From: Macrostomum lignano
Taxonomy: Eukaryota
Direction: 5' to 3'
NCBI GenBank assembly: GCA_002269645.1
Contig: NIVC01002398.1
Location: forward strand, 25,872-89,871
DNA: 64,000 nucleotides
Shown here: positions 1,313 to 28,358 of the stretch, piece after piece
Position numbering within the stretch: position 1 is the first letter of the stretch
Layout: every line of letters starts with the position of its first letter
Program-made: the position numbers and the translations under genes
The notes under the pieces: generated by a model
Seen by the model: the letters and a program-made list of their open reading frames with translations, nothing else
The model's database searches: none
Told to the model about the DNA's origin: nothing

Positions 1313-1419
1313 TACCTTGCTGGAATATGCTTGCTATGATGTAGCCGTGCATTGTGGGCTTGAGCAGCTACTCAGTAAAGCTGGGATATTTGGGCACAGA
1401 TAGTTAATTGCACAACCGG

Positions 1420-1690
1420 CTGATGCTGCTCCATTGCAGACAGCAGCACAGGTAGAAACGGCTCAATCCAAAGTGTCGTCATCAGCATGACCGGCTGCTA
1501 CCTGATCAAAGATGCCAGCGCAAAAGTAGGCAGAAACTTACTGACTTGCACATCCGGAGTCTGCCTGACAGCCGGTGCACAGCTGAACACCGTTGTTGGA
1601 CGGATGGGCGGCTCGACCTCCTTGGATTTGGAAGGAGGCGGCGGTGGCGGCAGCTTCGTTTTCCAGACGAGCATCGCAGCAACATGAGCG
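1420..1690 (+). pseudogene. Inverted, degraded fragment of exon 3 of the PAN/glycine-rich-domain gene family
   Basis: ctccattgcagacagcagcacaggtagaaacggctcaatccaaag...accggctgctacctgatc is the reverse complement of 8540-8610 and 16560-16630. It translates to TGCYLIK...LTAGAQLNTVVGRMGGSTSLDLEGGGGGGSFV with deletions, and no flanking exons are present. Confidence 0.85.
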
Positions 1691-2341: not shown

Positions 2342-3091
2342 TCAACGCCCGTAGATCTCGACTTCACACAGGTTCATAGGTTTTTCCTGCAGGTTGACAA
2401 TTCTGACTTTGCTGCCAAAAGCCTTGCAGGTGAAGCTGGCCACAGAGAACGGCACCGTCAGGTCCACCCGGTTGCACTCGACACCGTCAGCAATCAGCGA
2501 CAGCTTGTTGAGTCGGTTCATGCAGCAGTCAACTCTGTTGTAGATGGTGACGTGCGAGATGAAGGCAGGTCTGGCCAGCTGGCCTTCCCACCAGCCCTTT
2601 GCTCTATTAGCCGTATGACTACAAAATCCTGAGTTTTGATTTTTGACTCCATCGATGGCCTTCCCGCACACTGAGCCGTATTCAACCGAGCTCTGCTGGC
2701 AGCTGATGAATCTCAGCTTGGCTTTGTCTGCAATGTCCCAGAGTTCCTTTCAGTTATTTTATTGATTCATACCAAAACTCGGGCGGGTTCGCAGTGAGGA
2801 CTCACCCGTCAGCATGATGTGCAGGTCGCACTCATCCGAGCTGTGCCAAGTGCCGTTTTCAAAAGCCCACAGATCGAAGAAGCGGCAGAGGCCCCGCAGC
2901 AGGCTGAAGCCGAAGCAGGCGGGTCTCAGGGCGCAGAGCGATGCGCACTCCAGGCTGACGCTGCCTGGCGCAGAGTCCGTGACTGTCGGAGCCACCGCAC
3001 TTCTGACAGTCTGGAACAGGCTTTGAGTCGATATCGGCATGAAGAAGAGGGCTGCACTGAGCAGCAGCTGCAGTGAACGTTTTGGCTTCAT
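2342..3091 (-). CDS. Secreted PAN/apple-like + F-type lectin (fucolectin/FTP domain) protein, 2 exons (3091-2806, 2727-2342)
   Basis: Hydrophobic N-terminus (MKPKRSLQLLLSAALFFMPISTQS). Cys pattern ECASLCALRPACFGFSLLRGLC. A 78-nt phase-1 intron (GTGAGT...TTGCAG) joins to KAKLRFISCQQSSVEYGSVCGKAIDG...CSHT...WWEGQL...VTIYNRVDCCMNRL...MNLCEVEIYG, which contains the F-type lectin signature H-x26-R-x-D-x4-R. Confidence 0.88.
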
Positions 3092-4564
3092 TAGATGCTG
3101 TGCGTGGATAAAACAAGGTTTCCTTAAAAGATCGGCCTTTTAGACATGTTTTAACTCTGCGTACGCACTCCATTGGAGAAAGGCTCCATCATTGATCGAA
3201 TTGGTTGAGCTTGTAGTTGAGATGCTTCACGGCTATTGGTGGGAGTCGCGCAATAGTCATGCAGTAGGTATTTTAAACTGTGTTTAGTGCAGAAATACAG
3301 TTTTGTACAAGTTTTTTTTGTTTATTGTTTGTCTCCAATCTCAAATGATCATCGGCTTCATTAGACAATAGACCCACACTGGTGGTAACAGTTCCATCGT
3401 GAGTAGAACTCTTTGTTTCAAATTCGAATTCAGCAAAAAGTTTCATCTACAGTTGAATGAATCCCCGACAGAAGCGCAAGATCAAGTTCTAGCACTGCCC
3501 AGACAGCTCAGATGAATTCCAATTTACAAGTTCGCTGCTGGCGATATTAAACTGGCTACCTGAATATTTACTTAATCAAGAATAACTTTGATTTGGCGTG
3601 TCTAGAAAACTCCAGAAAATATCTGGTACGATATAACGACAAGCGGCTGGTGACATACAGATACAAATCGATTGTGTTCAAGGTTAGTTTTACTGCAACA
3701 GGTGTAGTGTGTTTCAAATGCGTAGTTGATTAGTTCAGCAAAGGTTCCAGACCTACGGTCCAATGGGTCCCTCTTTTTACACAGAAAAGCTGCACAATTT
3801 TGTCAAGATCAAAAAAAAACTTTATAACCCTTGTGTTGGGAAGTGAGCGAAACAGAAGCAGCATAGAAGTCAAGCTAATCTTAACATTCCTAGCTCTGCA
3901 GCAACGAAGGCGAATACGTTGAAAAGTAGCTCGCCTATGATATTATCTGACAGAAGTTCCAGGCGATGTTTCAGGTGCAGCACGATGGCAGAGATCGTGC
4001 GTAAGGATTTAAAACAACCAAAGTTATAAAATCTCCAGCACCTGTTCCCTTTCTTACTGATGATAACTCTTGCGTCTCTTCTCTTGAATTGAATCGTAGA
4101 TACTCGTGATGAAACTGTGGTCAGCAAAATCAAGTGTCTTTTGTTCCTAAATTTTCCAAGACTTGAAATCTACTGAGACAGATAAAAGCAATCAAGCTAC
4201 TTCAAAAGTATCAGGAAAAATCGATCAATTAGAAGTAGACCAAAAAAACAATTGAACCGGTGCCAGCATTAAATCGCATATTCCAAATTTAAGTTGCGAG
4301 TTAGGGTTAGGGTTTGAGTTTGGGTTGGGCTCGTAGGGATGCAAAATATTTAATTTTTATCACTATCAGAAAATTTCTCAACGAAGATAAAATAGAATAA
4401 ATTGTCTGCGTTGGCATGAAAACAACCAAAAGCTCACTAAATCAATACATCCGCTCTATGAATACATCTTCGTTCTTGTTTTAGTCAAGTTAATACACGT
4501 AAAAACAACCTATGGAATTCATTCGACGCTCGTATGGCTACTGAGAAATAATCGAGCAGCAGCA

Positions 4565-5170
4565 TCAGGTGTCCAAGTCGCAGGTGGCTGAGGCCGACTC
4601 CAGCAGGACGAACACGAAGCCCTGGACGCCGGTCCAGGTCCCGCCGAAGACGCAGCCGCCCCGGCAGAACCGCCGCAGCCGCCAATGTGGCCCCGACCCA
4701 GTCTGGCCCCGCCGACGCTGAAGCCACCGCCGCAGCCGCCAATGTGGCCCCGACCCAGTCTGGCCCCGCCGACGCTGAAGCCACCGCCGCAGCCGCCAAT
4801 GTGACCCTGACCCAGTCTGGCCCCGCCGACGCTGAAGCCACCGCCGCAGCCGCCAATGTGGCCCTGACCCAGTCTGGCTCCGCCGACGCTGAAGCCACCG
4901 CGGGTCCATCGAAGACGCTGCCGTCTCCGGCGCTGCCGCCGAACCAGACATCGGCCAGACGACTGCCGCTTCTCTTTTACTCTGTCCGAGCAGCCTGCCT
5001 GGGGCAACTCGGCCCTGCCGAGTTAGCGGGCTCCGCAGCCGCCGTGGTGCTAGCGGAGGTGTTAGTTGGGTTTTTGACGTCTGGCTGACCGTTGATGCCA
5101 CCGAATCCCGCGTTGAGGCTGTAGCCGTCCAGTCCGTCGAAACTGTCAATTCCAGCCTCACCCGGTTGTT
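4565..5170 (-). pseudogene. Decayed copy (copy A) of the last exon of the PAN/glycine-rich-domain gene
   Basis: Homologous to 7696-8192 and 15723-16219 (same acceptor gtag|, same C-terminus GGCVFGGTWTG.QGFV.VLLESASA.CD..T). It has an in-frame TAA at 5023-5025 replacing Trp, frameshifts and an internal deletion. A remnant of intron 3/exon 3 sits at ~5600-5670 beyond a SINE. Confidence 0.85.
4668..4900. repeat. 57-bp tandem repeat, about 4 copies, inside pseudogene copy A
   Basis: The unit gccaatgtggccccgacccagtctggccccgccgacgctgaagccaccgccgcagcc recurs with period 57. The minus strand encodes FSVGGARLG(Q/R)GHIGGCGGG. Confidence 0.95.
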
Positions 5171-5214
5171 CTACGGTGAAATCCATCAATCTGCTTTTTT
5201 AGAGGCAGGGGGGG

Positions 5215-5549
5215 TTGTGTGCACCCTGGCGCACTTTAAGCGACATTGGCACACAACCGGCGAGAGGAATGACTGCCCATTCCGCCGACTCCCCTGAGCA
5301 GGCACACAAGCGCGCGGATACGTACGCAGGCACACACTCACACAGGAGTGCACAGCCGCCCTAACTTTATATTATCGTTAGGCATGTACACTTCACTGCG
5401 CCTTGGGGGGTTGGCTCTCAAGGCCGTTAATTGCACGAGCAGAGCCAAGCCGAGATTCAAATTCAGCCCCAAATTAATGTGACTGCACTTGGAATCGAGC
5501 CTGGGTCGCTGGCACACCAGAGCAGCTGCGCTACCGCTGGGCTACGGCC
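5215..5549 (-). mobile_element. tRNA-derived SINE (family 1), near full length
   Basis: The minus-strand head GGCCGTAGCCCAGCGGTAGCGC...CCAGGCTCGATTCC has A- and B-box-like motifs. The body is shared with 27420-27700 and 38040-38170, and partial cores occur at ~11280-11470, ~22460-22530 and ~39440-39530. Confidence 0.8.
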
Positions 5550-7695
5550 CCCCCCCCGCCATTATCAATCTGCTTACTCGCGTGGTTGCGGATTTTCATA
5601 ATTTACAATTTAAGCAACTGCTGCTACTGAGATCACCATTTGATTGAAGGAGGCCTCGGTGCCTCCTCTGATAGTTTGATTGTCAGCCTTCATTTCTTGC
5701 GATTTTTCTTGAACAAAGGCTCGAGAAATAGCTATTTTACCTGACAACTAAAATTCCAAATCGATATTGAGTTGTGTGAGGTGCCCTGCTTCAGCGGGCT
5801 GCTGCGATTAATGAGTGAGAAATTGACGCAGCTGCAGTCTGGTGCACCAGAGTGGCAGAATTCAAGCTAAGTCTGAGACAGCTCCATCAATAGATGATTC
5901 TGGGTGCTGCTACTCAGAAGTGAGCTCCATTGTTATCGAAAAATTTTGCGTAGTGACTGAGACCCAGAAGCTTTTATGCGTTTCCTGAAAAAATTCCTTA
6001 CTTTTCAACTAAAATAAATAAGTGATTAAATCTGCCTTAAAGAGAAAATATGCAACCGACAGCCCAGCAGCAGCTATTCCGGCTTTTCAACTACAGTTGT
6101 GACAGCCGTTAAATCTTTCAATTAGTTTTGCGCTGAAGCTCTACCACTGTATAAACTTTCAGTATAAATCTTGAAATGTCCTAACTGCCGTGAATGCTGT
6201 TGTTTTTCAGCAATTTAGGAGCTTTTGCATCATTGCGCTGGTCATCTTCTAAATGTTTTAACCATGCATTCCTGACGTCCTTATTTGCGAGTCATTGTGC
6301 AGAGTTGGGGAACCTGTAGTTAGGTTTAGCTCGATAGAAAGAAAATCAGAAAAAAAGAAAAGCAGAAAGTCGGCTGCCTTCCAGGCTGAAGCCCTTATCG
6401 TACAGACACTTCATCAATATAAAAAACTGGTGGTTCGTGTCAGCCAGGGCGGCGGGTGCTTTTCTTCTTTCGCCGCCCTGATAAAGGGTACAAGGACTAC
6501 TTTTTACGTTGATTTCTGTGGTTGGCTGACGAACTCGATTTGCGATTAGGGAGGACTGTGCCGGGATTCGCGGAGCGAACTCACGCCCCGGTTTCAACTC
6601 GTTTCGGCCGGGGCGGCAGAAGCCATCCTTCGCTCGTCCCCAAGATTGAGGGTAGCGAACGGGCGATTCCCTTTAGATAGATTGAGACACAGCAGATAGC
6701 AACCCGAGTATTAGAATTCATGACTATATTTTCAACTGCTGATAAAAATACTTTTTGGAACTTAAATTTAAATGCTGTTGACTAAATTGTGGTCCATCAG
6801 TGAGCCCTAGCGTGCAGTACGGAAGGGCGCAGATGCCAGATGCGTGCAGCAAGGCAACTGCAGGGAGCTGCAGTCGAGCGACCTTGGCATGCACCGAAAG
6901 CAGACACTGAAAGACAGCTGAACTCACAAATCTTTTGCACTCGTCTAAAAAACCTCCAGAAATTGTCTGGCCGGAAAAAAGACGAGCGGCTTCGGACAGA
7001 CGAGTGCATTCAGTGTTTATTATTAATAATTCGAAATTGAGAACCGTTTGAGTTGTCTGAGTTCCAAGTCTGTAGCAGTGAAAGGTTCGAGAACCAGTTA
7101 AGTAGCTGTTTAGTTAGGGATTAAGGAAAGAAACAGCAAAAATGTATTGACGAAAAATTGCTTACTCGCGTGAAAATAATTAAATTAATAGAAAATAACA
7201 AGTCTTGAGTAAAAAGCCACACAATAGTTAAGCGCCTGAGTCTTATGTTAGAGACTTTAAAAGCCACTCACACTACTAGTGATGAGACGTTACTAAGTAT
7301 TTAGTTAGATTTATAGTTACTAAACTCTGAAGTCCTACACTACCTACGAAGCTTGCATTTCCAGTATTATTGTTTTAATAATTATGCTTTAAGCAAATTT
7401 CCAACCTGGGAGCACGTATGGAAATTGAGAATTTGTAAACAGAAATTTATTATTGAAAATTAGAACTGCAGAATTAAATTAATTAAAAATAGCCAACTCA
7501 GATTCATTTTGTCTACTTTTATAAACGATAGTTCCACAAATATTTACTCCACTAATCGCTACCACGGCTCCCTTGTTCGAAGCCTTTTTTCACACAGGAC
7601 AAGCGACAATGTTCACAGGAATAAGCAGTATTAATCAGTGATCGAGTTAAAACACGACTGGCCAATCCCCACTTCAAAAAGCGGTTTCTGTGACG

Positions 7696-9185
7696 TCAGG
7701 TGCCTGAATCGCAGGCGGCTGAGGCCGACTCCAGCAGGACGGACACGAAGCCCTGGTCGCCGGTCCAGGTGCCGCCGAACACGCAGCTGCCAATGCAGAA
7801 GGAGCCGCCGCCACCGCCGCTGTGGCCCTGGGCCAGTCCAGCTCCGCCCCCGCTGAAGCCACCGCCGCCTCCAGGGGCGCCTTTCAGTGAGCCGGTCCTG
7901 CTGCCGCCTCCACCGCCTCCGCCGAAGCCTCCATCACAGACGCTGTCGTCTCCGGCGCTGCCGCCGACCCAGCCGTCGGCTAGACTGCCGCCTCTGTCTC
8001 CGTCCAAGGAGCTCCGCCTGGGGCTGACGGCCCTGCCGAGCCAGCCGGCGCCGCAGCCGCCGTGGTTGCTTTCGCTTGGAGTATTGGCGGGGTTGTTGAA
8101 GCCTGGCTGACCGTTGCTGCCGCCGAATCCTGCGTTTGGTTTGTAGTCACCCAGACTGTCGGAACCGTTGATCCCAGTCCCTCCCGGTAGCCCTACGATG
8201 AAATCAATCAAACTGCTTATCCAAGTTAAATTTTCGCTTTTAAAACTTCACAATTCTAGAAACAAAGTTAATGAGATCACCATTTCTTTTGAAGCAAGCT
8301 CCGCCGCCTCCGCCGGCAGCCAGCAGCAGCAGCTGGTCGACCGTCCGGTACACGAAGCTGCCGCCGCCTCCGCCGCCTCCTTCGATATCCAACGACGTCG
8401 AGCCGCCCATCTGGTCCACAACGATGCTCAGCTGGGTGCCGGCCGTCAGGTTGACTCTGGCGCTCACCTGGGCTCCCTGGCCTCCGGATGTGTTTGTCAG
8501 TAAGTTGTCGCCACCTCTGGCTCCGGCAGCTCTGATCAGGTAGCAGCCGGTCGTGTTGATGAGGACGCTTTGGATTGAGCCGTTTCTACCTGTGCTGCTG
8601 TCTGCAATGGAGCAGCGTCAGCGAGGTAAAAAATGGAAGTGAATGCAATTTCAGTCTGTGCCAAGATCATGGAAACCACCCACGACTTTGCACTCCTGAC
8701 TCACTCCAAAGCTGCACTGCAGGAGAAGGCCAGTCGCTGTCGTCCGCCTTCCACACCTTCGCACCGACCTGAGATCCGATGACTCGCTGCACCTGATTTG
8801 GTTAGATTGACAGTTTGGCGGTTGTTATGGTGACCATCTCGCACGTGGCATTGCTCTCCACCGAGACGGCAGCGCTGCAGCTCACCCTCTGGCACTTTGC
8901 TAGACAGTCGGTTGCATCAGTGGCCTTGGTTGTTGTCGTGACGTTGTTGTAGGCGTTCAGAACGGCTTCCAGCATGTGAAGCTGCTGCTCTGAGCACACA
9001 GAATAGGTCCGCAAACTGGTGCCTTGTACTCGCAGCACGAGTGAGCAGCAAACTGCGTTGGGGCAATTGGTTGTCAATAATAAATAGCATGCATTGAATA
9101 ACTTTTAGCTGTGGTTTTTAAGTCAAGATTGCAGTCACTTACCGAATAATAAAAGCAATTGTAAAGACAGAATTTTATTAGTCAT
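7696..9185 (-). pseudogene. Copy B of secreted PAN/apple-like + ALK/LTK-type glycine-rich-domain gene with premature stop; exons 9185-9143, 9052-8705, 8601-8281, 8192-7696
   Basis: Same four-exon, all-phase-1 structure as the copy at 15723-17217. TAA at 8804-8802 stands where copy C has TCA (Ser). The downstream exons remain open. Confidence 0.82.
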
Positions 9186-10454
9186 ACTTGCAGCGATAGT
9201 CTGATTGTCCACCTGCAATTTCTAGTGATTCTTGCGGCACAAACGGCTTGAGAGCTATTCTAACTGTATTTCCTCAACTTCAATCCTAAATGAACTATCC
9301 TAAGACTCGCAGTAGGGATGCTGAGTGCGGTCGCTGATCCTTGTTTTGGGAGCTGCTTTAGAGGAGACGCTTGCTAGAGACTGAATCAAGTAGATGTGGA
9401 AGGAAGTCTGAGCAGAGGCGGGTTCGCAGCCAATCCCAGACATGAGCTGCCCTCGTCGATAATGCTTGGGCGCTGCGGTGCAAGAGTTTCTTAAATAATA
9501 ACAATTAGCAGGAGACTCAATTTTTTTTATCATCGTCTCACGCATAATGCGCTGGGGTAGTTCTTCATATTCCGCTTACTGATGAGCACGTACTTTACAC
9601 GCACACTCTGTGCCTTGGGATTTGGCCTTTGTTGTGGTTGGTTGTGAATCGCACGACAACCGCTGACAATTTCGTGTACAACCCCAAATAAATTTTGGCC
9701 ACGAACTTCGTGGTGCGAAAGCCAGTCGCGTTTACCACTGACCTACTCTGACCCCAACAGTTCGTGTATTTGGGAATTTTTAGACTGAAAACTGCCTCAT
9801 ATTGCGGACCCGTTTTTGTAGGATTTTTGTTAACTTGCCGAAAAATCTGACGCTCAGCTACAATTGTTCTACAAAATTCGAATTGGATAACCTGTGCTCG
9901 AGTAACCAAGCTAGGCAATGCAGATGGATTCAGATGGATAAGCAGATGGATAAGCATGAAGGATGTCATCGCTGTTGGCAGGATTTTCTTGATTAGCCTC
10001 AAGTGTGCAGAATAAAAGTAAGTGCAAAAGAGGGCGCCGGCTTAGAATAAAAGTTTAGCACACTCAATAACTAGAAGAGTTAACACCTTTCAATAGTGGG
10101 TGTTTCACGCATGGTTTCGACACCAGCTGAATAAAAAAATGCTGAACCTTGCATAGGCGTGCGGCAAAAATCTTGAGTTGTGTAAAGTGCCCTGCTTCAG
10201 CGAGCTGCTGCCAAGAATGAGTGGGAAGTGGGAAATAAGTTCCATTGTTGTTGGAATATTTCGCACTAGGCTGAAAACCAGAAAAGCTTTTATGCATTTA
10301 TTAAAAACGAACGAGCTGTGACAGTTGTTTTAGCTTACAATACGCTTTGGGCTTAAGCTTTAACAACGTTTAAAAATTACTGTTCTATAGTTTTTGAAAC
10401 TTTTTGAAAATACCTGTCTTACCAGTGTTACATGTACATTGCACCACACACTGA

Positions 10455-10510
10455 AGAGAAGCAATTGTAAAGACAGAACTTGATCAGTCATGCTTGCAGC
10501 GATAGTCTTC
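10455..10510 (-). pseudogene. Isolated exon-1 (signal peptide) remnant of the same gene family
   Basis: Encodes MTDQVLSLQLLLF, versus MTNKILSLQLLLLF and MTDKILSVQLLFLF in copies B and C. Upstream-flank homology resumes at ~10930-11230 (compare 17270-17540). Confidence 0.7.
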
Positions 10511-11364
10511 AATGTCTTGCATTTCTTCTTTTTAAACCCAAAAGAAGAATCAAAAGCAGCATTGGCACGAAAGGGGATGCGCGGAAGCAACCCCATAAGA
10601 GCAACAGCTCGAATTAAAAGTGTATTTTGCATTACGAAAGCAAACAGCGATGCAAGAAAATTGGAAAAATAAAACTTTAAAGAAAAAAAATTGAGCTCAT
10701 GCAGGCAGCCAATAACGCTGAGTCAACTGAGCGAGACGCCAATAAAAGGGGCGACGGCGCAGAGGCTAAAGCCCACCCCACCAGGCCACCACCCCACACA
10801 CGCAGAGCCAAAGCACCACCCACACAGAGCGGACAGGAGAGAGAAAGTACGCAAGGCGACACAAGGCGGGCAGAGGAGTGGGCTTTAAAACTGGCTATTG
10901 ACTAGTCAAGACCAGTCACAAACCAACACAAATAAAAGGCTCGATTGATAGCTTTTCTACCTGTCTTTTTAGTGATGAAATACCAAATCAATTTTATCAT
11001 ATCAGAAGTGTATATACTTTTAGTCAGGAAGCAGAGTGCATTCGCTGCTAGCTCGTACTTTTCCTCTGGAAGCTGAGAAGTTGTTTGCTACTCTAGAGAC
11101 TAATACAAGTAGGTGTGGAAGAAGGTCTGAGCAGCGGACGGCTAAGAGGACGACCAATCTCAGACATGAGCTGCCCTTATCGCTCAGGAGCTTTACCTAC
11201 CGATGATTAATAAGCGCTGGAGTTTCTTAAAAAGTAATTTTTATTATTGCCCAAGGGCAGCCGTAGTTCCCACACAAGCGCAGAGACACTTCTGCCCATT
11301 CCGATGACTTTTGAGCACATTGATGTGCGTCAATAATTTACGCGCGAGTACTGTATGTAGCACC

Positions 11365-11368
<4 letters not shown>

Positions 11369-11403
<35 letters not shown>
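11369..11403. repeat. (CA)n microsatellite within a SINE family-1 core
   Basis: CA run followed by ctcacagaggggtacagcggccctgacttt, similar to the SINE core cacacactcacacaggagtgcacagccgccctaacttt. Confidence 0.9.
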
Positions 11404-11408
<5 letters not shown>

Positions 11409-11829
11409 GAGGGGTACAGCGGCCCTGACTTTTTAACTGTCAGAAATGTACACTCGGTTTACCCTACGGGTTGTTGGTCTTGGTTGTGGATGGTTGTGAA
11501 TCTCACGACAACTGCCGGTGACCAACTTTTTTTGCCGCGAAATGAAACGAACCATGTGCTGGAGGCTGTCAGGATGGAAAGCAAGCCACCAGATCTCGAG
11601 CGGCACTACCGGAAGTTGTGGGCGGCTAAATGGAACCAGCTAAGCCGCACAGACACGAGCTCGCTCCGTTGGGAGCTCGTCAATTAGGGGCCGGCGCAAA
11701 GGCTGAAGAAACTAGGTTGGAGGAGACCAGGCGGTCGCCGAGCTAGAGAGTATGGATATGCTGAACATTCCCAGGACCAGAGACGCACCCCCTGAAGCGC
11801 TGTGGAGCAGCGGGAAGCTCGTCAGCTGA

Positions 11830-12330
11830 ACCATGAGGGGAACTAAGCACAAACGACTAAGCACAAAGGAAGTCAACAGAGCTAAATGTGTGGCTACTGT
11901 GGCGGAGGTCAGTGCCGGCATCGACCTTACTATTTTCACTAAAGGCTTGGATAGCAAGGAAGGTAGAGGCGGCAGCAGAACCGATATTATGCGTAGCGCC
12001 GACGTCTGCAAGAATGAAATCGAAACGGGAGACATCATCGAGACGATCGAGAAGCCAGCGGGCGCGGTGAGCAGCTCCGTCGCTGCCAAAGCGAGTCTCC
12101 GGAACAGCGTCTGGGACTGGCGAGCTACCGCCATCATCTCAGACAGCGCAAGCGCTCTTAAGGGTCTCATGGGCACTGGGGGGGGGGGGGGGGCAGAAAT
12201 CGCATCGCCGAAATTCAGGACCTGAGGTGCGAGGTTAAGCTCGCGTGGGTGCCTGCGTACTCCGGCTTGCCGTGCATCGAAGCAGCCGATGCTACGGCCG
12301 GTAGAGCCAATCAGCTTCCCCAGGAGGGAA
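11830..12330 (+). mobile_element. Degenerate non-LTR retrotransposon RNase H domain
   Basis: IFTKGLDSKEGRGG resembles IYTDGS..G..G; IISDSASALKGL resembles I.SDS.SAL; after a poly-G frameshift, VKLAWVPAYSGLPCIEAADATA resembles V.L.WVPGH.G..GNE.AD..A. Catalytic residues are mutated. Confidence 0.7.
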
Positions 12331-12899
12331 CTGAAATCACAGACTGAAATCCAAACTGCGCCATGAGAGCACCAGCTTCAGCCACAATAGAGGCAGCAAA
12401 GGAAGCAATGCAGCGTTCAGCTCCAGAGCCGAAGCTGTTATTTTCCGCCGCTTTGGATCCGGGCACTCCCTAGAGCTGGCGTCCTCGCGCCCTGGATCTT
12501 CGACGGATGCAGCGTCGCGCCCGACCGACTATCGCAGTGTGAGTGCACGCTTAATGGCAGTAGTGTGAAGGCGCTTTTAGAAACACCGGAAGCCAGTGTT
12601 CACTAGTTGAGTCCAGCATCCTGACAAAATCCCAGCTCAGACAGGCAAACACAGTCAGAGTGCAACCTCATTCTATGAGCAAGCAGCCAATTAGCATAGA
12701 ACGGCAAATTGAATTGCCGGTGGTGGAGTGGTAGCTCAGCAATTGTTTTTCGTTGTGTCAGGTTTGGTCTGTCCTGTCATTGCTGGAGTCGACTTCATCG
12801 GCAACCAAAATTTGCAACTGGACTTCACAGGATCTTCACAAGAAGCTGGCCAAGTCTGCAGCACTGAGGCTGACACCGACGATCCAGTTGACATCGAAG

Positions 12900-13720
12900 T
12901 CACACTCGTCCCCGAGTTAATTGTCCCCGCTGAGAAGGGTCGGCGGCACCTGGAGAAGCGGCTGTCCGTTCTCGGCTATGCGGACGACCTCGCGCTGCTG
13001 TCAACGACGGCTGAAGGCGCCCAGCGGCTGCTGGATGGCCTGACGGCAGCAGCGTCGCGAGTCGGCCTCAAGCTGAACGCGCGGAAGACGGTAGTCTTCA
13101 CTGTATACTCCAAAAAGCCTGCCGAATAATCGAGACGCTGCCGGGGATGCAATCATGCTTACCCACTGCCAGCGGTTCCTGTATCTCTGCGGCCTCGTGC
13201 CGGACCTTGCCGACGACCTGGTGAGAGGACGAGGATTGGCCTGGGCCGCGCTCCGTGCTCCATTCTGAGGCCCTGGATGAAAGGCTCAAGGCTCGGCTGT
13301 TTCAGGCAGTCGTTAAGACTGTCCTGTTGTACAACGCCTAGACCTGGACCCTGCCGCACGCCTTAGAGAGGCAGCTGGACGCTGCGCATGCGGCCATGCT
13401 GCGTGCGGCGTTCAGAGTGCGCAGCGGTCCAGACAGCGAGACCAACGCCGCACTCTACGCAAGAGCGCGCCTGATGCGGCTTTCTGACCTGCTGCGCGGG
13501 CGACGACTTTGACTAGCTGGCCATATCATCCAGTCGGAGGCCCGCTGCCCTGAGCCGCTACACGAAGTGCTGCTGCTCAAGCTGCAGGGACCGCGCAGGC
13601 GAGGCCAAGGGCGAACGGCGAGATATCCTGACCAGCTTTTGACTGATGCTGGCGCCTCGGACCAAGCTGGGGGTGTGACTTTTTGAGAGCTTGAGGACGC
13701 GCTCTCTGACTTCTCCCCCC
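12900..13720 (+). mobile_element. 5'-truncated RTE-like non-LTR retrotransposon (RT C-terminal half), decayed
   Basis: LSVLGYADDLALLS...AQRLLDGLTAAASRVGLKLNARKT (YADD motif). Other frames give LKARLFQAVVKTVLLY, TWTL...LDAAHAAMLRAAF and RRLLLAGHII, typical of RTE ORF ends. Stops and frameshifts are present. Confidence 0.85.
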
Positions 13721-15722
13721 ATTTATGGTCACTGATCAAGTGTCTGGCGGGAGAAGTCTTGTTGTTTTTAATGTATTGGAATTAGGGATGGAATCTGTGG
13801 GAATTTGCAATTCTCTCGATTGGCCAGGTCGGCAGAACCATTTTTCGCTCGTCGTCTGATTAGGGTAGCGAACAGGAATTTCCACCTAGGTAGATGTCTA
13901 GGACGCAGCACATAGCAACTCGAGAATCTGTCTTCATGTAAACATGTTCAACTACTATGTAAAGCTACCGTTAAAGGCTTGAAGAGTTTAAGAGTGGTGA
14001 TCAGTCACTCAAAAACTCCCACTTCTAGACACTGGGGAACAAGTGCCTAGGTTTTACCAGTTCAAACTACTTACTGCAGCGGATCCTCTTGGGGTCGGCA
14101 GCCGGTGGAGTTCTGTGGCACGTCGGGATAGCAAGCTTGCTGAGCGGTTACGGCGACCGGTTCCGGTGAACAACTGTTTTTCTTTGGTGTCCTTAACTTT
14201 ATCTGTGGGTCGACCAGAACGAGAGCGAATCAAAATTCTTGACGGTCCTCGAGCTCGAAATTAACAGTAGAACGTGCGCCCTAATGAACAATTGAATTCT
14301 CTAATTTTCTGTGATAGGTCCTCCTGAAGGGCGGCTTCTTCGTTACGTCCGAAACGTAACGGATAACTCAATTAAATCAATAAATCCTCTAGGAATATCC
14401 TAGGAAACAAGGAGGCCTTTCTCAAATGTATCGACAATGAACTGCTCTCGTATACTCAATTAACCAACTTATTAGCGCTAGTAACAAATATCTAAATCGG
14501 GTAAACGCTTACCAATTGGACAGGTGTGGTCCCTCAGAGATTGGTCTTCTTATTTCTTCAGAGTCTTCTTAGAGACCGCTCCGAGTCTGAATTTTTGACT
14601 CAAATTTCACTTATATTTATAGCAAAATTTTGGAGAAAAACCGGTTTGGGATTGGGTACATGTATTTACTTAGGTCAAAAATGTTTGATTAAGCTGTCAT
14701 GCATGTTTGAGCATTACCATATATGGGGTTAAGCAAATACAGCTGTTGGAATCCGGTTCCTTGATCAAACAATGTAGGTTTCTAAATCATTCTGTTTGCG
14801 CGTGATTCCTAAAATAGATATGACTCATTTTGAAAGAAATTGACTTCCTTAGAATATTACTTCAAGTAGAGCATTACGGTATGGTCTAATAACTCTACAG
14901 GCTTAGCGGCCTACATACAAAGTTTAAAACCTTGCAATTCCATCGTGGTTGTTCATACTTGAGCCTAGCAAGCGGTATGGAGCAACTGTAGGAATCTGCA
15001 GCCGAGGGCCGAAAGCAGATACTGAAAGACAGCTGACCACACAAATCTGTTTATCTCGTTTAAAAATTGCCCTGAAATTCTCTGGCAGAAAAAAAGACGA
15101 GCGGCTTCAAACAGACGAGTGCATTGAGTATTTATTAATTATTGGGATTTGAGAACTGTTTAAGTTGTCTGAGTGCAAAGTCAGTAGCAGAGAAAAGATT
15201 CCATAATCGGGTGAATAGCAGTTCAGTATGGCGTGATTTCAGGACAGAGACAGCAAAAACATACGAAAACTAAGCTTTGTACGAAAACTAAGCTAAGAAT
15301 ATAAAGATCTAATAAAAAGTAACAACATGATTAATCACATTGGCTGCAAGTTATGAATTTTATAATGCACATACACTAGGGAGGAGAAGTTAGTGACTAC
15401 AATGTTCTTATCACTAGCAGCATAGTGCGGATAATATGGAATTAAATATTGTTTAGCTACATTTATAAAAGCAAACTAACAAAATTTATTATGCCTACTT
15501 TAAAACCCTTCCCCCAAATAATTGCTAGTATTTTGCAATGACTAAAATTCTATTGAACTGCTATGTTCTACTAGTAGCCATCCAAGCAGTCAAAGAACTA
15601 ACCCATTTGAACCAAAAGAAAAACTTCACGGTTCACAAGAATAAGCAGTACTACACAATGACCATCAAAGTTGAAACACGACAGCTCGCCAGGCCCAAAA
15701 TGAGCAAGCAGTTGCAGTGCAA

Positions 15723-17217
15723 TCAGGTGCCCGAGTCGCACGCGGCTGAGGCCGACTCCAGCAGGACGGACACGAAGCCCTGGTCGCCGGTCCAGGTGCC
15801 GCCGAACACGCAGCCGCCACTACAGAAGGAGCCGCCGCCTCCGCCGATGTGGCCGTAGGCCAGTCCAGCTCCGCCGCCGCTGAAGCCGCCGCCGGCTCCA
15901 GGGGTGCCTTTCTCTGAGCCGGTCATGCTGCCGCCTCCACCGCCTCCGCCGAAGCCTCCATCGCAGACGCTGCCGTCTCCGGCGCTGCCGCCGACCCAGC
16001 CGTGGGCCAGACTGCCGCCTCTCTCTCCGTCCGAGGAGCTCCGTCTGGGGTTAACGGCCCTGCCGAGCCAGCCGGCGCCGCAGCCGCCGTGGTTGCTTTT
16101 GAGGTGGGTGCTAGCGGGGCTGTTTGAGCCTGGCTTACCGTTGGCGCCGCCGAATCCCGGGTATGCGCTGTTGGCTCCGTTGCTGTCGGAACCGTTTGTC
16201 CCAGTCTCTGCTGGTTGTCCTACCATCAATAAAACTTCTTATTAGAGTGGTTTAATGGCTTCTGATGATTTACAATTTAAGCAACTGCTGCTACTAAGCC
16301 CACCATTTCTAGCGAAGGAAGCTCCGCCGCCTCCGCCGGCAGCCAGCAGCAGCAGCTGGTCGACCGTCCGGTACACGAAGCTGCCGCCGCCTCCGCCGCC
16401 TCCTTCATAATCCAAGAACGTCGAGCCGCCCATCTGGCCCACAACGATGCTCAGCTGGGTGCCGGCTGTCAGGTTAACTCTGGCGCTCACCTGGGCTCCC
16501 TGGCCTCCGGATGTGTTCGTCAGTAAGTTTCCGCCACCTCTGGCGCCGGCAGCTTTGATCAGGTAGCAGCCGGTCGTGTTGATGAGGACGCTTTGGATTG
16601 AGCCGTTTCTACCTGTGCTGCTGTCTGCAATGGAGCAGCGTCAGCGAGTTACAAAACTGGAGTGAGTGCAATTTCTGTCTGTGCCGAAATCATGGTAGCC
16701 ACCCTCGACAAAGACTATGCATTGATGACTCACTCCGAAGCTGCACTGCAGGAGAAGGCCAGTCGCTGTCGTCCGCCTTCCACACCTTCGCACCGACCTG
16801 AGATCCGATGACTTGCTGCACCTGATCTGCTGAGATTGACAGCTTGGCGGTTGTTATGGTGACCATCTCGCACGTGGCATTGCTCTCCACCGAGACGGCA
16901 GCGCTGCAGCTCACCCTCTGGCACTTCGCTAGACAATCGGTAGCATCAGTGGCCTTGGTTGTTGTTGTGACGTTGTTGTAGGCGTTCAGAACGGCTTCCA
17001 GCATGTGAAGCTGCTGCTCTGAGCACACAGAATAGGTCCGCAAACTGGTGGTGCCTTGTACTCGAAGCACGAGAGAGCAGCAAACTGCATTGGGGCAATG
17101 CGCGGTCAGTAATACACAGCATGCATTGAATAACTGTGAGCAGCGGTTCTTAAGTCAGGGTGGCAATCACTTACCGAATAAGAAAAGTAATTGTACAGAC
17201 AGAATTTTATCAGTCAT
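15723..17217 (-). CDS. Secreted PAN/apple-like + ALK/LTK-type glycine-rich-domain protein (copy C, intact, ~403 aa); exons 17217-17175, 17084-16734, 16624-16304, 16219-15723
   Basis: Exons of 43+351+321+497=1212 nt give an open frame with GT-AG phase-1 introns of 84-109 nt. Signal-peptide-like MTDKILSVQLLFLFVCCSLVLRVQG; Cys motif DCLAKCQRVSC...TCEMV; then GSIQSVLINTTGCYLIKAAGARGG...LSIVVGQMG...GGGGGGGSFVY...LLLAAGGGGGA...GGFGGGGGGG...GAGGGFSGGG...GGGGSF, matching the ALK/LTK glycine-rich domain pattern. No TM segment or kinase. Confidence 0.85.
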
Positions 17218-18904
17218 GCTTGCAGCGATAGCTTGATTGTCGGCCTTCAATTTACTGCGAATCTTCTTGAGTAAAAGGCTTGATGGATAGCTATTTAACC
17301 TTTCTTTCAACAGTTGAAATCCAAAATGAATTAATCATATAATCACCAGTGTATATACTCTTAGGCGGGAAGCAGAGTTCGTTCGAGAAGTCACTTGCTA
17401 CACTCTAGAGACTGAATCAAGATGTGGAAGAAAGTCTGAGCAGAGGTGGGTTCGCAGCTAATTATAGACTTGAGTTGTCCTCGTGGTTCGGGAGCTTTAT
17501 CTATCGATGATGCTTGAGCGCTGTTCTGCAGGAGTTTCCCAAATAATAACAGTTATACTCGCAAAAGGATGCAGGTATAGCCTTAGGTGTACAGAAAGAA
17601 AGTGTATCGGATTATGGCCAAAAATTGTTATACTTAGCATCTTGATTAGTTAGGTTGTTCACGCATCGCTACGATGGCAGCTGAACAAAAAATAACAGCC
17701 TTTGCATTGCGTGCAGCAGAGTCGTGTGTGGTGCCCTGCTTCAGTGAGCCGCTGCCAAAAATGAGTGGGGACTTGACGCAGCTGCTCAGTCAAGTGCATC
17801 AGAGTCGCAAAACACCCAAATCTTCAGTCAGCTGCATCGGTAGATGATTCTGGGTGCTGCTGCTTAGAAATGAGTTCCGCTGTAGTCGGCAAGCTTCGCA
17901 CTGGCACTGAGAACCAGAAGATTCTATGCATTTGTCATTTAAACTGCAGCTGTGACAATCGTTTAAACTCGCAACAATGTTTGCGTTTATGCTTTACCAC
18001 CATTTAAAAATACCTGTAACACGGCTTATCTACTGTAATATAAAGTTTACCAGTCATATATCATGTTCAAATCAGCAAAAAAGCACATCATTACGAGTAA
18101 TAGCCTCACATAGTGATGTCATCATAAGCATGGCGCATGTACACCATATTTTCCTTCAGCAGTGTATTAATAGTTGAAGGCTGGCTCCATCAATAGATGA
18201 TTCTGGGCGCTGCTAGTCAGAGCTGAGTTTCATTGTTGTCTGAAAAATTCTCGCGCAGGGACTGAGACCCATAAGCAAACAGATATTGTCTTTTAAAAGT
18301 CAGACTAACTGTCAGACTCACCCTGGTTAAAGTTGATTTCTTGTAAAACTGGCTTGGAAATGCTGGCTACAGTCTGTAAATATTTAGTCGATTTTATTAA
18401 TAAATAAAATAATTAGAATAATTATATATGATTTCTAGGCTTAATGAGTCTGATTCGTGTTGTTTTTGCCATGTAACCAATGTCTGGATTCTATTCCATT
18501 TAAACAAATGAATTCTATGCATCATTTCTCAATTTCATTTCCCGAATTAGCAGAAAATATAATAAAATAATGTCTGTACTTACACCGCTGGTGACACAAG
18601 CATTTCAAGTAGTGTGAGACTAAGTTAAATATCTCTAATTCTAACTATCCGCTAAACCTCTTATCACTAGTAGTGCATGTGCATTTTAAGTTTCATTGCA
18701 CACCCGAGAGTCAATTGTTCTTCAATACATTTTTTATGTTTCAGTTCGTAAATCACTTCGGGTTAAACTGCTATTTCACTGATTCTTGAACCTTTCACTG
18801 CTAATGAATTTGCACTCAGACAACTCAAAGGTTTCTCAAAAAGATTACATTTCTCTCCCTGTGGGCTGAAATCCAGAAGGTTGCGTACTGCAAATCGAAT
18901 TTGT

Positions 18905-19810
18905 CCAGAGTCCGCGCTTCCTCGATGACTTGGCGAAGAGCCAGGATCTGCGCCACTGTGCCCCGGTGGGGCCGGAACCCATTCTGCTCAGGACGCAGGT
19001 ACGGATCCAGCACGGGCTGCAACCGCGATAGCAGCATACGGTTGAACAGATTCGCAGCGCAGGACTGCAGGCAGATACCTCAGTGCTCTTCAAGCCGCGT
19101 GATGCACGGCTTCTTCGGAATAGCGACGATGTGCGCCGTGGTCAATTCGTTGGGTGCAGCCTCTCCGAAAAGCACGCGGTTCATCACTCTGGCGACCTCA
19201 CTGGCCACACAGTGAGTCGCAGCGACTCGATGGGCACCTCGTCCGGACCCAGCGCTTTCCCGCCCGGTGACTGTTGGGCGAGCCTCACAACGTCGGCTGT
19301 GCTGACTGGTGCAAAGCTGAAACTCTCCTCTGCCGGCAACGGCGTCTCCGGCGGCAGCCTCAAATCGTTTGGCAGCGGGGGCGACGGCGCGTTGACGATG
19401 GCGGCGAAGAACTCGCGCAGCTCATTTCTGCGCTCCTACGGAGTGTCGCCAGCCAGGTTGAGCGGAGTGTTGCCCAGTCAGAGCATTAATGGTGGACCAG
19501 GCCACGCGCCCTTTGGCGTCGGGTCCAGCGGCGGTGACGGCCTGGATGGCGTCGTCAACAGCGGCCTGTTGCCGCTGCAGGTAGACAGCCGCCAGAGCCT
19601 CCTCCGCCTCGCGAGTTGGCCGCCTGCTCAGACGGAGCCTCTCCAGCTCTGCCCTCGCTTGCCGAATCGATCAGGGTCATCCTGCCAGACCGGCTGTTTA
19701 TGTTGGGCCGGTTGCATCAACGGGACTGCTTGCTCCGCCGCGGCTCTAACCGCGGCACTTACCTCAGTGTACTCGGCGCGCCCGCACCTGTCGCCAGGTC
19801 GCAAACTTGC
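18905..19810 (-). mobile_element. Internal fragment of RTE-like non-LTR retrotransposon (linker + RT N-terminal motifs), decayed
   Basis: Minus-strand translations across frameshifts give PVWQDDP, KALGPDEVPIE, IVAIPKKP and LLSRLQPVLDPYLRPEQNGFRPHRGTVAQILALRQVIEEAR (Q.GFR..R RT motif). Confidence 0.82.
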
Positions 19811-20930: not shown

Positions 20931-21430
20931 AGACTTGATGCAGCCTACCAAAGAAGCGTGACTCCGTCTCTCAGGCTGGCTCCATCAATGGATGATTCTG
21001 GGCGCTGCTGTTCAGAGCTGAGTTCCATTGTTGTCTGCAAATTTCTCTATCTGAGAGACTTGATGCAGCCTACCAAAGAAGCGTGACTCCGTCTCTCAGG
21101 CTGGCTCCATCAATGGATGATTCTGGGCGCTGCTGTTCAGAGCTGAGTTCCATTGTTGTCTGCAAATTTCTCTATCTGAGAGACTTGATGCAGCCAACCA
21201 AAGAAGCGTGACTCCGTCTCTCAGGCTGGCTCCATCAATGGATGATTCTGGGCGCTGCTGTTCAGAGCTGAGTTCCATTGTTGTCTGCAAATTTCTCTAT
21301 CTGAGAGACTTGATGCAGCCTACCAAAGAAGCGTGACTCCGTCTCTCAGGCTGGCTCCATCAATCGATGATTCTGGGCGCTGCTATTCAGAGCTGAGTTC
21401 CATTGTTGTCGGCAAATTTCTCTACCTGAG
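20931..21430. repeat. 125-bp tandem repeat, about 4 copies
   Basis: agacttgatgcagcc starts at 20931, 21056, 21181 and 21306. The core ggctccatcaatggatgattctgggcgctgct also occurs dispersed at ~5880, ~17840 and ~18180. Confidence 0.95.

Positions 21431-28247: not shown

Positions 28248-28282
<35 letters not shown>

Positions 28283-28301: not shown

Positions 28302-28358
<57 letters not shown>

What the first reader, a model, noticed from the sequence alone, without database searches (positions are those of the whole stretch)
7696..17217. Tandem family of secreted, kinase-less 'PAN + ALK/LTK glycine-rich domain' proteins
Seen: copy C encodes a signal peptide, a PAN/apple-like Cys domain and a complete ALK/LTK-type glycine-rich module, then stops, with no TM or kinase. 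There are at least five related pieces within 17 kb. Established: in ALK/LTK receptors this domain (polyglycine-II helix array plus TNF-like fold) binds the ligand. Inference: these could be soluble decoy receptors, or recognition/mucus/adhesion proteins evolving by birth and death.
Basis: partly seen in the sequence, partly recalled or inferred. Interest (0 to 1): 0.7.

Follow-up and report, generated by a model that had tools for sequence, protein, structure and literature searches.

The report
Secreted kinase-less ALK-type glycine-rich proteins
A flatworm (Macrostomum-type) genome segment carries a small, decaying tandem cluster of genes for secreted proteins that join a PAN/apple-like module to the same glycine-rich ligand-binding fold used by the ALK/LTK receptors, with no membrane anchor or kinase; they belong to a large, catalogued but unstudied family, so the finding is real but not a new kind of thing.

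Summary
Copy C (minus strand, 4 exons, 17217-15723) gives exactly the 403-aa product described: an N-terminal signal-like hydrophobic segment, a PAN/apple-like Cys module, a complete TNF-like plus glycine-rich (GRD) module, then a stop. There is no second hydrophobic segment and no kinase motif anywhere in the 64-kb window.

GRD homology is solid. A family profile hits ALK, LTK and SCD-2 ectodomains in the PDB at E 5e-17 to 2e-10. An AlphaFold model of an 87%-identical Macrostomum lignano protein matches only ALK/LTK GRD structures (Foldseek E 5e-11 to 6e-7). The PAN assignment is weaker: it is below the Pfam threshold, but the Cys pattern and fold hits agree.

The cluster has five pieces:
- one intact gene (C);
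- one full-length copy with a single in-frame TAA (B);
- three relics.

That fits birth-and-death evolution with mosaic divergence.

The proteins are about 40-50% identical to cnidarian secreted PAN/EGF-GRD proteins but only about 22-26% to ALK/LTK. The GRD profile finds about 8,700 cluster representatives. So this looks like an old secreted GRD family, not an ALK-derived decoy. Its most likely role, by inference only, is extracellular binding or recognition. Novelty: a new member of a known, uncharacterised kind.

The parts
15723..17217 (-). Copy C: intact 4-exon gene (exons 17217-17175, 17084-16734, 16624-16304, 16219-15723) encoding 403 aa. Signal-like segment 1-25, PAN/apple-like module about 26-130 (exon 2), TNF-like plus glycine-rich (GRD) module 131-403 (exons 3-4), stop TGA 15725-15723.
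   Evidence: Splice model and translation. Hydropathy and sequons. Pfam PF12810 sub-threshold at 16.1 bits. Family profile versus PDB ALK/LTK, E 5e-17. AF2 and Foldseek on the 87%-identical P0001.
7696..9185 (-). Copy B: full-length paralogue with the same 4 exons (9185-9143, 9052-8705, 8601-8281, 8192-7696) but an in-frame TAA at 8804-8802 (codon 98, exon 2). Probable young pseudogene or null allele.
   Evidence: ORF list (ORF 8802..9077 ends at that stop). 87.4% DNA identity to C over 1645 nt.
10454..11219 (-). Relic: promoter-proximal region plus 5'UTR and exon 1 ('MTDQVLSLQLLLF') of a further copy. No exons 2-4 follow.
   Evidence: blastn to C: 10516-10454 matches 17241-17180 (87%); 11219-10933 matches 17523-17272 (66%). 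ORF 10360-10632.
4564..6155 (-). Relic. Upstream flank and 5'UTR (6155-5670) are joined directly to the end of exon 3 and intron 3 (5666-5564). A dispersed repeat of about 390 nt is inserted at 5563-5175. Exon 4 (5174-4564) has an in-frame stop, frame changes and a 57-bp x 4.1 tandem array (4669-4901).
1419..1685 (+). Relic on the opposite strand: intron-2 acceptor plus an exon-3-like segment (65% aa identity to C residues 130-218) with an internal deletion, running into a stop.
2342..3091 (-). Neighbouring gene D (exons 3091-2806 and 2727-2342), 223 aa: signal-like N-terminus, PAN-like Cys module, F-type-lectin / F5_F8_type_C_2 domain. Not a GRD gene, but part of the same cluster of secreted binding-module genes.
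   Evidence: PF22633, 33.7 bits against a cutoff of 27.8. The M. lignano model P0124 fuses a near-identical gene to a GRD gene.
12728..13126 (+). Reverse-transcriptase fragment (retroelement debris) in the spacer between copies B and C.
   Evidence: Pfam RVT_1, 29.4 bits, E 8e-7.

Best explanation
SHOWN:
- The locus is a tandem, partly decayed cluster of a lineage-expanded flatworm gene family. The best hits are Macrostomum lignano proteins at 87-92% identity.
- Its members are small secreted-type proteins made of (i) a cleavable-looking signal peptide, (ii) a PAN/apple-like disulfide module and (iii) a complete 'TG' module. The TG module is a TNF-like beta-sandwich split by a glycine-rich insert that AlphaFold models with high confidence. 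It is homologous to the ligand-binding ectodomain of the ALK/LTK receptor kinases.
- The protein ends right after the last TNF-like strand. It has no EGF module, no transmembrane helix and no kinase, and no such exons exist in the window.
- Copy C is intact, copy B has one nonsense codon, and three further pieces are fragments.

INFERRED:
- The family is an independent, old secreted branch of the GRD superfamily shared with cnidarians (the same PAN-then-GRD order), not a truncated ALK.
- The protein works outside the cell as a soluble, N-glycosylated binding or recognition protein.
- The rigid glycine lattice serves as a scaffold, and the short loops between glycine motifs act as specificity determinants. 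These loops are the most variable positions among close paralogues (copy C residues about 234-240, 252-259 and 271-280).
- The PAN module adds a second protein or carbohydrate contact.
- Copy number turns over by tandem duplication, gene conversion or mosaicism, transposon insertion and decay.
For: - Gene model: 403 aa with canonical splice sites.
- Hydropathy: a single N-terminal hydrophobic segment and 8 sequons.
- Sequence homology: the family profile hits ALK 7n00 (E 4.9e-17), LTK 7nx0 (3.8e-14) and C. elegans SCD-2 7lir (1.9e-10).
- Structure: the AF2 model of P0001 has mean pLDDT 79.8, with block means of about 67-96 (mostly 81-96) across the GRD and no DSSP helices or strands over residues 244-390, as expected for polyglycine-II helices, flanked by beta strands on both sides.
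- Foldseek: the top 21 PDB hits are all ALK/LTK/SCD-2 GRDs, prob 1.0.
- PAN: the C-x3-C-x4-C...C core aligns with a Pfam-significant coral PAN_1, and nearly all of the top ~35 Foldseek hits for exon 2 are PAN/apple domains (HGF, plasminogen, SML-2, leech antiplatelet protein).
- No kinase catalytic motifs in six frames of the window; no kinase Pfam hit in any relative tested.
- Relatives end at the same point (P0001, P0007, P0010, P0089).
- Relationship: coral proteins score 98-101 bits and 39-48% identity with a PAN+GRD architecture, against 16 bits for LTK.
- Family size: 8,713 representative clusters.
- Cluster dynamics. dN/dS between B and C is 0.52 overall and 0.18 in the PAN exon. The region around intron 3 and the start of exon 4 is far more diverged (dS 0.44; intron 60% identical) than the rest (dS 0.07-0.12; introns 81-85%).
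- Variable loops among paralogues.
- Neighbouring secreted F-type-lectin gene.
Against: - There are no expression data, so transcription, the splice pattern and secretion of copy C are predictions.
- Copy C itself scores below Pfam's gathering thresholds for both PF12810 (16.1 against 24.5 bits) and PAN_1 (13.1 against 21.4).
- The PAN-only model is low confidence (pLDDT 54) and its Foldseek E-values are only 0.02-0.3.
- The variable segment has dN/dS 0.65 with high dS as well. That argues for a different history (conversion or mosaic) rather than demonstrated positive selection on binding loops.
- No ligand is known for any kinase-less GRD protein. No paper on them was found.
Confidence: 0.75

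Rival explanations
1. Soluble decoy receptor: the secreted GRD sequesters the ligand of an ALK-type receptor kinase (a Jeb/HEN-1/ALKAL-like factor) and so damps signalling.
For: It has the same fold as the ALK/LTK ligand-binding domain. It has a signal peptide and no anchor.
Against: - Identity to ALK/LTK is only about 22-26% and phmmer gives 16 bits. It is much closer to cnidarian secreted GRD proteins.
- The family is multi-copy, fast-turning-over and loop-variable. That is unlike a decoy for one conserved ligand.
- No GRD-plus-kinase protein appeared among the 120 best relatives or the representatives tested.
- The PAN-GRD architecture is shared with corals.
Confidence: 0.07
2. Structural, matrix, mucus or adhesive component: a glycine-rich secreted glycoprotein that builds an extracellular material rather than recognising a specific ligand.
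For: 21% Gly and 8 N-glycosylation sequons. PAN modules are common in mucus, adhesion and matrix proteins (established knowledge). Giant multi-GRD proteins exist in the wider family.
Against: The glycine-rich part is a compact, confidently modelled globular domain, not a fibrous repeat. The protein is small, with single modules and no cross-linking or repeat motifs. The neighbouring gene is a lectin-type binder.
Confidence: 0.12
3. The whole cluster is non-functional debris: copy C is a not-yet-disrupted pseudogene in a decaying array.
For: Four of the five pieces are broken. Overall dN/dS between B and C is 0.52, and the exact protein is not in the protein collection.
Against: Copy C keeps a 1,212-nt open frame with four canonical splice junctions. 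The PAN exon has dN/dS 0.18. Many M. lignano gene models encode near-identical full-length proteins (P0001, P0122).
Confidence: 0.05
4. Mis-annotated receptor kinase: transmembrane and kinase exons exist but lie outside the model.
For: UniRef auto-names several Macrostomum relatives 'receptor protein-tyrosine kinase' or 'protein kinase domain-containing'.
Against: Those proteins show only PF12810 in Pfam. No kinase motifs occur in any frame of the 64-kb window. The 6.5 kb downstream of C holds only short ORFs and a retroelement fragment before copy B begins. An in-frame stop follows the domain in C, B, the relic at 4564 and distant relatives.
Confidence: 0.01

Closest known systems
ALK / LTK / SCD-2 extracellular 'TG' (TNF-like + glycine-rich) ligand-binding domain (Pfam PF12810; PDB 7N00, 7NX0, 7LIR)
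   Same: It has the same domain, with the same order of conserved glycine motifs. A TNF-like sandwich is formed by segments on both sides of the glycine-rich insert. Profile E-values are 5e-17 to 2e-10, Foldseek prob is 1.0 and TM normalised to the target is 0.43-0.63.
   Different: There are no MAM, LDLa or EGF modules, no transmembrane helix and no kinase. A PAN-like module sits in front instead. Identity is only about 22-26%. The genes are multi-copy and tandem. No cognate cytokine is known.
Cnidarian uncharacterised PAN/EGF-GRD proteins (e.g. Stylophora pistillata AWC38_SpisGene21703 = P0089; Porites P0099; Pocillopora P0072)
   Same: They are kinase-less, have an N-terminal hydrophobic start, and have PAN_1 followed by PF12810. 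GRD identity is 39-48% and they end right after the GRD.
   Different: The coral proteins carry an extra roughly 80-aa linker module and often EGF repeats, plus a roughly 25-aa insert in the GRD (alignment). Their PAN passes Pfam's threshold, while the flatworm one does not.
Macrostomum lignano UniProt entries A0A1I8HRN4 (P0001), A0A1I8GD17 (P0002), A0A1I8IUV7 (P0122), A0A1I8HRC7 (P0124)
   Same: They are 87-92% identical paralogues or orthologues with the same modules. P0124 shows the same neighbourhood, a gene-D-like lectin next to GRD genes.
   Different: They are not identical to anything in the window. Many database models are fragments or fusions, and their automatic names ('receptor protein-tyrosine kinase') are misleading.
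Phage receptor-binding tips with TNF-like + polyglycine-II lattice (cyanophage Pam3 gp24, PDB 7YPX; Salmonella phage S16 gp38)
   Same: They use a glycine-motif lattice as a rigid scaffold with variable distal loops proposed to bind the receptor. Pam3 gp24 was reported to be structurally similar to the SCD-2 GRD (PMC9608196). 7ypx is the first non-ALK Foldseek hit (E 0.13).
   Different: The match is weak (prob 0.35). The phage proteins are trimeric fibres. No sequence homology was shown here. This is an analogy for the mechanism only.

Membership tests
Pfam PF12810 ALK_LTK_GRD (glycine-rich/TNF-like domain family) | Score at or above the curated gathering threshold (24.5 bits) of the Pfam model | tested here: not met
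   Copy C scores 16.1 bits (E 0.012) and its GRD alone scores 16.7 bits. Close relatives straddle the cutoff (P0017 24.8, P0008 23.8, P0001 21.1). Several carry precomputed PF12810 hits. The shortfall probably reflects the composition-bias penalty rather than a lack of homology.
Pfam PF12810 ALK_LTK_GRD (glycine-rich/TNF-like domain family) | Significant sequence homology to experimentally defined ALK/LTK GRDs | tested here: met
   The 65-sequence family profile including copy C hits ALK at E 4.9e-17, LTK at 3.8e-14 and SCD-2 at 1.9e-10, covering nearly the whole domain.
Pfam PF12810 ALK_LTK_GRD (glycine-rich/TNF-like domain family) | Fold: a TNF-like beta-sandwich interrupted by a lattice of glycine-rich (polyglycine-II) segments | tested here: met
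   The AF2 model of the 87%-identical P0001 has high pLDDT across the GRD. Foldseek's top 21 hits are all ALK/LTK/SCD-2 GRDs, E 4.6e-11 to 6.4e-7. This was tested on a proxy, not on copy C itself.
ALK/LTK receptor tyrosine kinases | Single-pass transmembrane helix after the ectodomain | tested here: not met
   The only 19-residue window with Kyte-Doolittle mean above 1.6 lies within residues 1-29. The protein ends 'LLESASAACDSGT' followed by a stop.
ALK/LTK receptor tyrosine kinases | Cytoplasmic tyrosine-kinase domain | tested here: not met
   No Pfam kinase hit. No HRDLxxxN or DFG motifs in any of six frames of the 64-kb window. Only short ORFs and retroelement debris lie downstream.
ALK/LTK receptor tyrosine kinases | Membrane-proximal EGF-like module and (ALK) MAM/LDLa modules | tested here: not met
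   None of these Pfam families was detected. The sequence stops right after the GRD.
PAN/apple domain (Pfam PF00024 PAN_1; PROSITE Apple) | Score above Pfam's gathering threshold (21.4 bits) | tested here: not met
   Exon-2 product: PAN_1 13.1 bits, E 0.091. UniRef nevertheless names P0001, P0002, P0017 and P0122 'Apple domain-containing protein'.
PAN/apple domain (Pfam PF00024 PAN_1; PROSITE Apple) | Conserved cysteine core (C...C-x3-C-x4/5-C...C) and hairpin/helix fold | tested here: inconclusive
   Cys35, Cys65, Cys69, Cys74 and Cys86 are present and align with coral PAN_1 cysteines. The AF2 model of exon 2 has pLDDT of only 54, but nearly all of its top ~35 Foldseek hits are PAN/apple domains (E 0.02-0.4, prob up to 0.99).
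Secreted kinase-less PAN-GRD proteins (cnidarian/flatworm group, uncharacterised) | Signal-type N-terminus, PAN N-terminal to a single GRD, termination after the GRD | tested here: met
   Copy C. P0089: PAN_1 at 40-96 and PF12810 at 184-370. Alignment.
Decoy receptors | Binds the same ligand as a signalling receptor present in the same organism | not testable with these tools
   No whole-genome data for the source organism and no binding data. No GRD-plus-kinase relative was seen among the listed hits.

The most novel reading that the evidence does not exclude
Secreted PAN-GRD proteins may be an ancient (pre-bilaterian) family of soluble recognition molecules. In this reading a rigid polyglycine-II lattice displays short, fast-diverging loops, as in the glycine-lattice tips of phage receptor-binding proteins. 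The ALK/LTK ligand-binding ectodomain would have been recruited from this family, not the reverse. In the flatworm the family would then be a diversifying immune or reproductive recognition repertoire, clustered with F-type lectin genes.
Probability: 0.25. Interest if true: 0.6.

Novelty: new member of a known kind. Interest (0 to 1): 0.35.

Why it matters
The ALK/LTK glycine-rich domain is usually discussed as a peculiarity of two receptor kinases. This locus shows the same domain as a free-standing secreted module in a regenerating flatworm model that is amenable to RNAi and in situ hybridisation. It has close cnidarian counterparts and thousands of relatives.

That gives a tractable entry point for asking what the domain did before, or besides, cytokine reception by ALK. 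It also flags that automatic names such as 'receptor protein-tyrosine kinase' on these proteins are wrong. It does not reveal a new type of system: the domain family and these architectures are already in the databases, only unstudied.

Tried and rejected
I used the 87%-identical P0001 for the full-length model and the contiguous exon 2 of copy C for the PAN model.
2. Exact look-ups of the copy-C and gene-D proteins, and of the exon-4 ORF, found nothing. So the source assembly and sample could not be identified and no transcript evidence was obtained.
3. Single-sequence searches look marginal: Pfam 16 bits and PDB phmmer E 0.034. Taken alone they would have suggested a chance glycine-rich match. 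The profile and structure searches overturned that.
4. A profile comparison of gene D's PAN-like module with the family's PAN module gave no signal (hhalign prob 0.2). I therefore do not claim exon shuffling between them.
5. NCBIfam gave no hit.
6. Positive selection on the variable loop was considered and rejected as unproven. dN/dS is 0.65 with dS also elevated, and the adjacent intron is also highly diverged, pointing to mosaic history.
7. The idea that the roughly 300-aa PF12810 proteins from ENA metagenomes are bacterial was rejected. The one inspected lies on a gene-sparse 4.8-Mb contig with an animal-type neighbour, and the sequences resemble coral proteins.
8. Seven literature searches found no study of kinase-less GRD proteins. 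The only mention is three PF12810 proteins of unknown function in the fungus Drechmeria coniospora (PMC4859500).
I replaced it with a six-frame kinase-motif scan and inspection of all ORFs of 55 aa or more.


Full report
**What is there**

The window is eukaryotic, with spliced genes, retroelement debris and many minisatellites. On the minus strand, copy C is assembled from four exons with canonical GT/AG boundaries: 17217-17175, 17084-16734, 16624-16304 and 16219-15723. The CDS is 1,212 nt and encodes 403 aa, ending in TGA.

Features of the protein:
- Residues 1-25 (MTDKILSVQLLFLFVCCSLVLRVQG) form the only hydrophobic segment. They have a V-x-G cleavage-type motif.
- There are eight N-x-S/T sequons.
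- Gly makes up 21% of the residues.
- The C-terminus (…LLESASAACDSGT) is not hydrophobic, so neither a transmembrane helix nor a GPI signal is apparent.

**How many copies**

tblastn with copy C and with twelve relatives, plus a self-blastn of the window, gives five related pieces, all within the first 17.3 kb. None lies in 17-64 kb.

- Copy B (9185-7696, minus strand) has the same four exons and is 87.4% identical to C over 1,645 nt, introns included. It carries a single in-frame TAA at 8804-8802 and is otherwise open.
- The piece at 4564-6155 (minus strand) keeps the upstream flank and 5'UTR but has lost exon 1 through most of exon 3. A dispersed repeat of about 390 nt sits in intron 3. Its exon 4 has a stop, frame changes and a 57-bp x 4.1 tandem array that reiterates one glycine-motif unit.
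- The piece at 10454-11219 (minus strand) is a promoter plus exon-1 stub.
- The piece at 1419-1685 (plus strand) is an inverted exon-3 stub that still carries the intron acceptor.

So the 'tandem family' is real, but only one member is intact. A reverse-transcriptase fragment lies between B and C.

**Divergence pattern**

Between B and C, dN/dS is 0.52 overall and 0.18 in the PAN exon. Divergence is strongly uneven along the gene:

| Region | dS | dN | Intron identity |
|---|---|---|---|
| Most of the gene | 0.07-0.12 | – | introns 1-2: 81-85% |
| Intron 3 plus the first 45 codons of exon 4 | 0.44 | 0.29 | intron 3: 60% |

This fits mosaic histories, such as gene conversion among paralogues. 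It is not evidence for positive selection.

Among ten close paralogues the most variable positions are copy-C residues about 234-240, 252-259 and 271-280. These are short segments between invariant glycine motifs.

**Is the glycine-rich part really an ALK/LTK GRD?**

Single-sequence tests are marginal. Pfam PF12810 scores 16.1 bits against a 24.5-bit cutoff, and phmmer against the PDB gives LTK at E 0.034.

Three stronger tests settle it.

1. A database search returns 1,151 relatives. Most carry precomputed PF12810 hits.
2. A 65-sequence profile including copy C hits human ALK (7N00, E 4.9e-17), LTK (7NX0, 3.8e-14) and C. elegans SCD-2 (7LIR, 1.9e-10) over nearly the whole domain.
3. Structure prediction agrees.
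   - Mean pLDDT is 79.8, with block means of about 67-96 (mostly 81-96) across the GRD.
   - Beta strands lie on both sides of a roughly 150-residue stretch that is confidently modelled but has no DSSP helices or strands. That is what a polyglycine-II lattice inserted in a TNF-like sandwich should look like.
   - Foldseek against the PDB returns ALK, LTK and SCD-2 GRD structures as all 21 top hits (E 4.6e-11 to 6.4e-7, prob 1.0). The next hit is the cyanophage Pam3 fibre tip at E 0.13.

**Is the N-terminal part PAN/apple?**

Pfam PAN_1 is below threshold at 13.1 against 21.4 bits. Other evidence points the same way:
- The C-x3-C-x4-C…C core aligns with the Pfam-significant PAN_1 of coral relatives.
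- UniRef labels the Macrostomum homologues 'Apple domain-containing'.
- An AF2 model of copy C's own exon 2 is low confidence (pLDDT 54), yet nearly all of its top ~35 Foldseek hits are PAN/apple domains. These include the HGF N domain, plasminogen, Sarcocystis SML-2 and leech antiplatelet protein, at E 0.02-0.4.

I call it PAN-like: probable, not proven.

**No kinase**

- No kinase catalytic-loop or DFG motif occurs in any frame of the 64-kb window.
- The 6.5 kb downstream of C holds only short ORFs and retroelement debris before copy B starts.
- Relatives from flatworm and corals end at the same place.
- The Macrostomum protein that UniRef names 'protein kinase domain-containing' (P0018) shows only PF12810.

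**Relationships**

The best hits are Macrostomum lignano proteins at 87-92% identity. None is identical. One M. lignano model (P0124) fuses a near-identical copy of the window's gene D to a GRD gene. So the neighbourhood is conserved in that species, and the window comes from M. lignano or a close relative.

Outside flatworms, the nearest proteins are cnidarian. They include Stylophora, Porites, Pocillopora, Montipora, Acropora, Actinostola and an Aurelia-type EukProt entry. They score 39-48% identity and about 100 bits, with PAN and/or EGF modules before the GRD and no kinase. The many roughly 300-aa 'metagenome' hits look like single-exon calls on animal contigs.

By contrast, ALK/LTK are only 22-26% identical in structural alignment. 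A full HMMER scan of 1.84 billion cluster representatives finds 8,713 matches at E ≤ 1e-3 and 4,160 at E ≤ 1e-10. Many of these are 2-7 kaa proteins with 3-8 GRD stretches, and those I scanned have no kinase.

The GRD is therefore a widespread extracellular module, and the kinase-linked form is the minority. The shared PAN-then-GRD order in cnidarians and the flatworm suggests an old secreted lineage rather than truncated ALK copies. That is an inference.

**Mechanism**

Shown: the domain composition, the lack of an anchor or kinase, and the cluster dynamics.

Inferred:
- The protein acts as a soluble, glycosylated extracellular binder.
- The TNF-like/polyglycine lattice is a rigid scaffold.
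- In ALK/LTK the TG domain binds ALKAL cytokines (PDB entry titles; established knowledge). In phage Pam3 gp24 a similar lattice is proposed to display variable receptor-binding loops (PMC9608196).
- In the flatworm paralogues the variable positions sit in loops between glycine motifs.
- The adjacent gene D encodes a signal peptide, a PAN-like module and an F-type-lectin/F5_F8_type_C_2 domain. That fits a local cluster of secreted recognition proteins.

I rate the decoy-receptor reading as unlikely, at about 0.07, for the reasons above. A structural or adhesive role (0.12) and an all-pseudogene cluster (0.05) remain possible.

**Novelty**

The domain family (PF12810), its kinase-less members and even the PAN+GRD architecture are already in public databases. 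No functional study turned up in seven literature searches. The one relevant remark is that PF12810 proteins in a nematophagous fungus have no known function (PMC4859500).

This is a new, well-delimited member cluster of a known but uncharacterised kind. It is interesting mainly as a tractable route to the non-receptor biology and the origin of the ALK ligand-binding domain.

**Context**

The rest of the window holds ordinary housekeeping genes on the minus strand: a GHMP-kinase/galactokinase-like gene, XRCC1 and Sec16. Their introns are filled with minisatellite arrays.

Noticed in passing
window 2342-3091 (-): Two-exon gene D (223 aa): signal-like N-terminus, a PAN-like Cys module and an F-type-lectin / F5_F8_type_C_2 domain (33.7 bits). 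It carries the AIDG…CSHT…WW…NR.DCC..RL motif typical of fucolectins. The M. lignano model P0124 fuses a near-identical gene to a GRD gene, so the neighbourhood is conserved.
   Followed up: partly
window 4669-4901: A 57-bp x 4.1 tandem array (97% matches) lies inside the exon-4 relic. Each unit re-encodes one glycine-motif segment ('GGGFSVGGARLGQGHIGGCGG'). It shows that the glycine lattice unit can expand by in-frame tandem duplication, which may be how the multi-motif lattice grew.
   Followed up: partly
window 5175-5563; also 27427-27692 and 38041-38118: A dispersed repeat of about 390 nt (90-94% identical copies) is inserted into intron 3 of the relic. Part of it looks tRNA-like by eye, but ARAGORN finds no tRNA in the window. 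It is a possible SINE.
   Followed up: partly
window 12728-13126 (+) and 18825-19215: Retroelement debris. An RVT_1 fragment (29.4 bits) lies between copies B and C. A second RT-like ORF near 18.8-19.2 kb was recognised by eye only, with no Pfam hit at E<=1e-3.
   Followed up: partly
window 20929-61503: There is an unusually dense series of long minisatellite arrays, mostly in the introns of housekeeping genes. Examples: 44-bp x 72 (23867-27045), CAGA x 150 (28168-28766), 23-bp x 144 (32066-35361), 32-bp x 81 (39535-42172) and 36-bp x 45 within the Q/P-rich coding ORF 58100-59809. They produce strong local GC and AT skews.
   Followed up: no
window 22545-23825 (-), 30605-37951 (-), 50519-60694 (-): The flanking genes are ordinary. 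They are a GHMP-kinase (galactokinase-like) gene, XRCC1 (XRCC1_N 185.9 bits, plus BRCT exons) and Sec16 (TPR_Sec16 exons, plus a 1,403-aa Q/P-rich ORF).
   Followed up: partly
relatives P0003, P0004, P0005, P0011-P0013, P0018 (Macrostomum lignano UniRef entries): The automatic names 'receptor protein-tyrosine kinase' and 'Protein kinase domain-containing protein' are attached to kinase-less GRD fragments. P0018 shows only PF12810 in Pfam. Names such as 'PE-PGRS family protein', 'loricrin-like' and 'lysozyme-like' on other relatives are likewise compositional artefacts.
   Followed up: partly
representative-library hits P0126-P0140, P0158, P0201, P0204: Giant proteins of 2,000-7,000 aa contain 3-8 GRD-like stretches. 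P0126 (2,116 aa) has PF12810 as its only Pfam family. Their organisms and functions are unknown. P0127 is a fused model of PAN+GRD with IFT140.
   Followed up: partly
window 20929-21434 and 18178-18270: A 125-bp x 4.1 tandem repeat (98% matches) has a related single unit about 2.7 kb upstream. Its nature is unknown.
   Followed up: no
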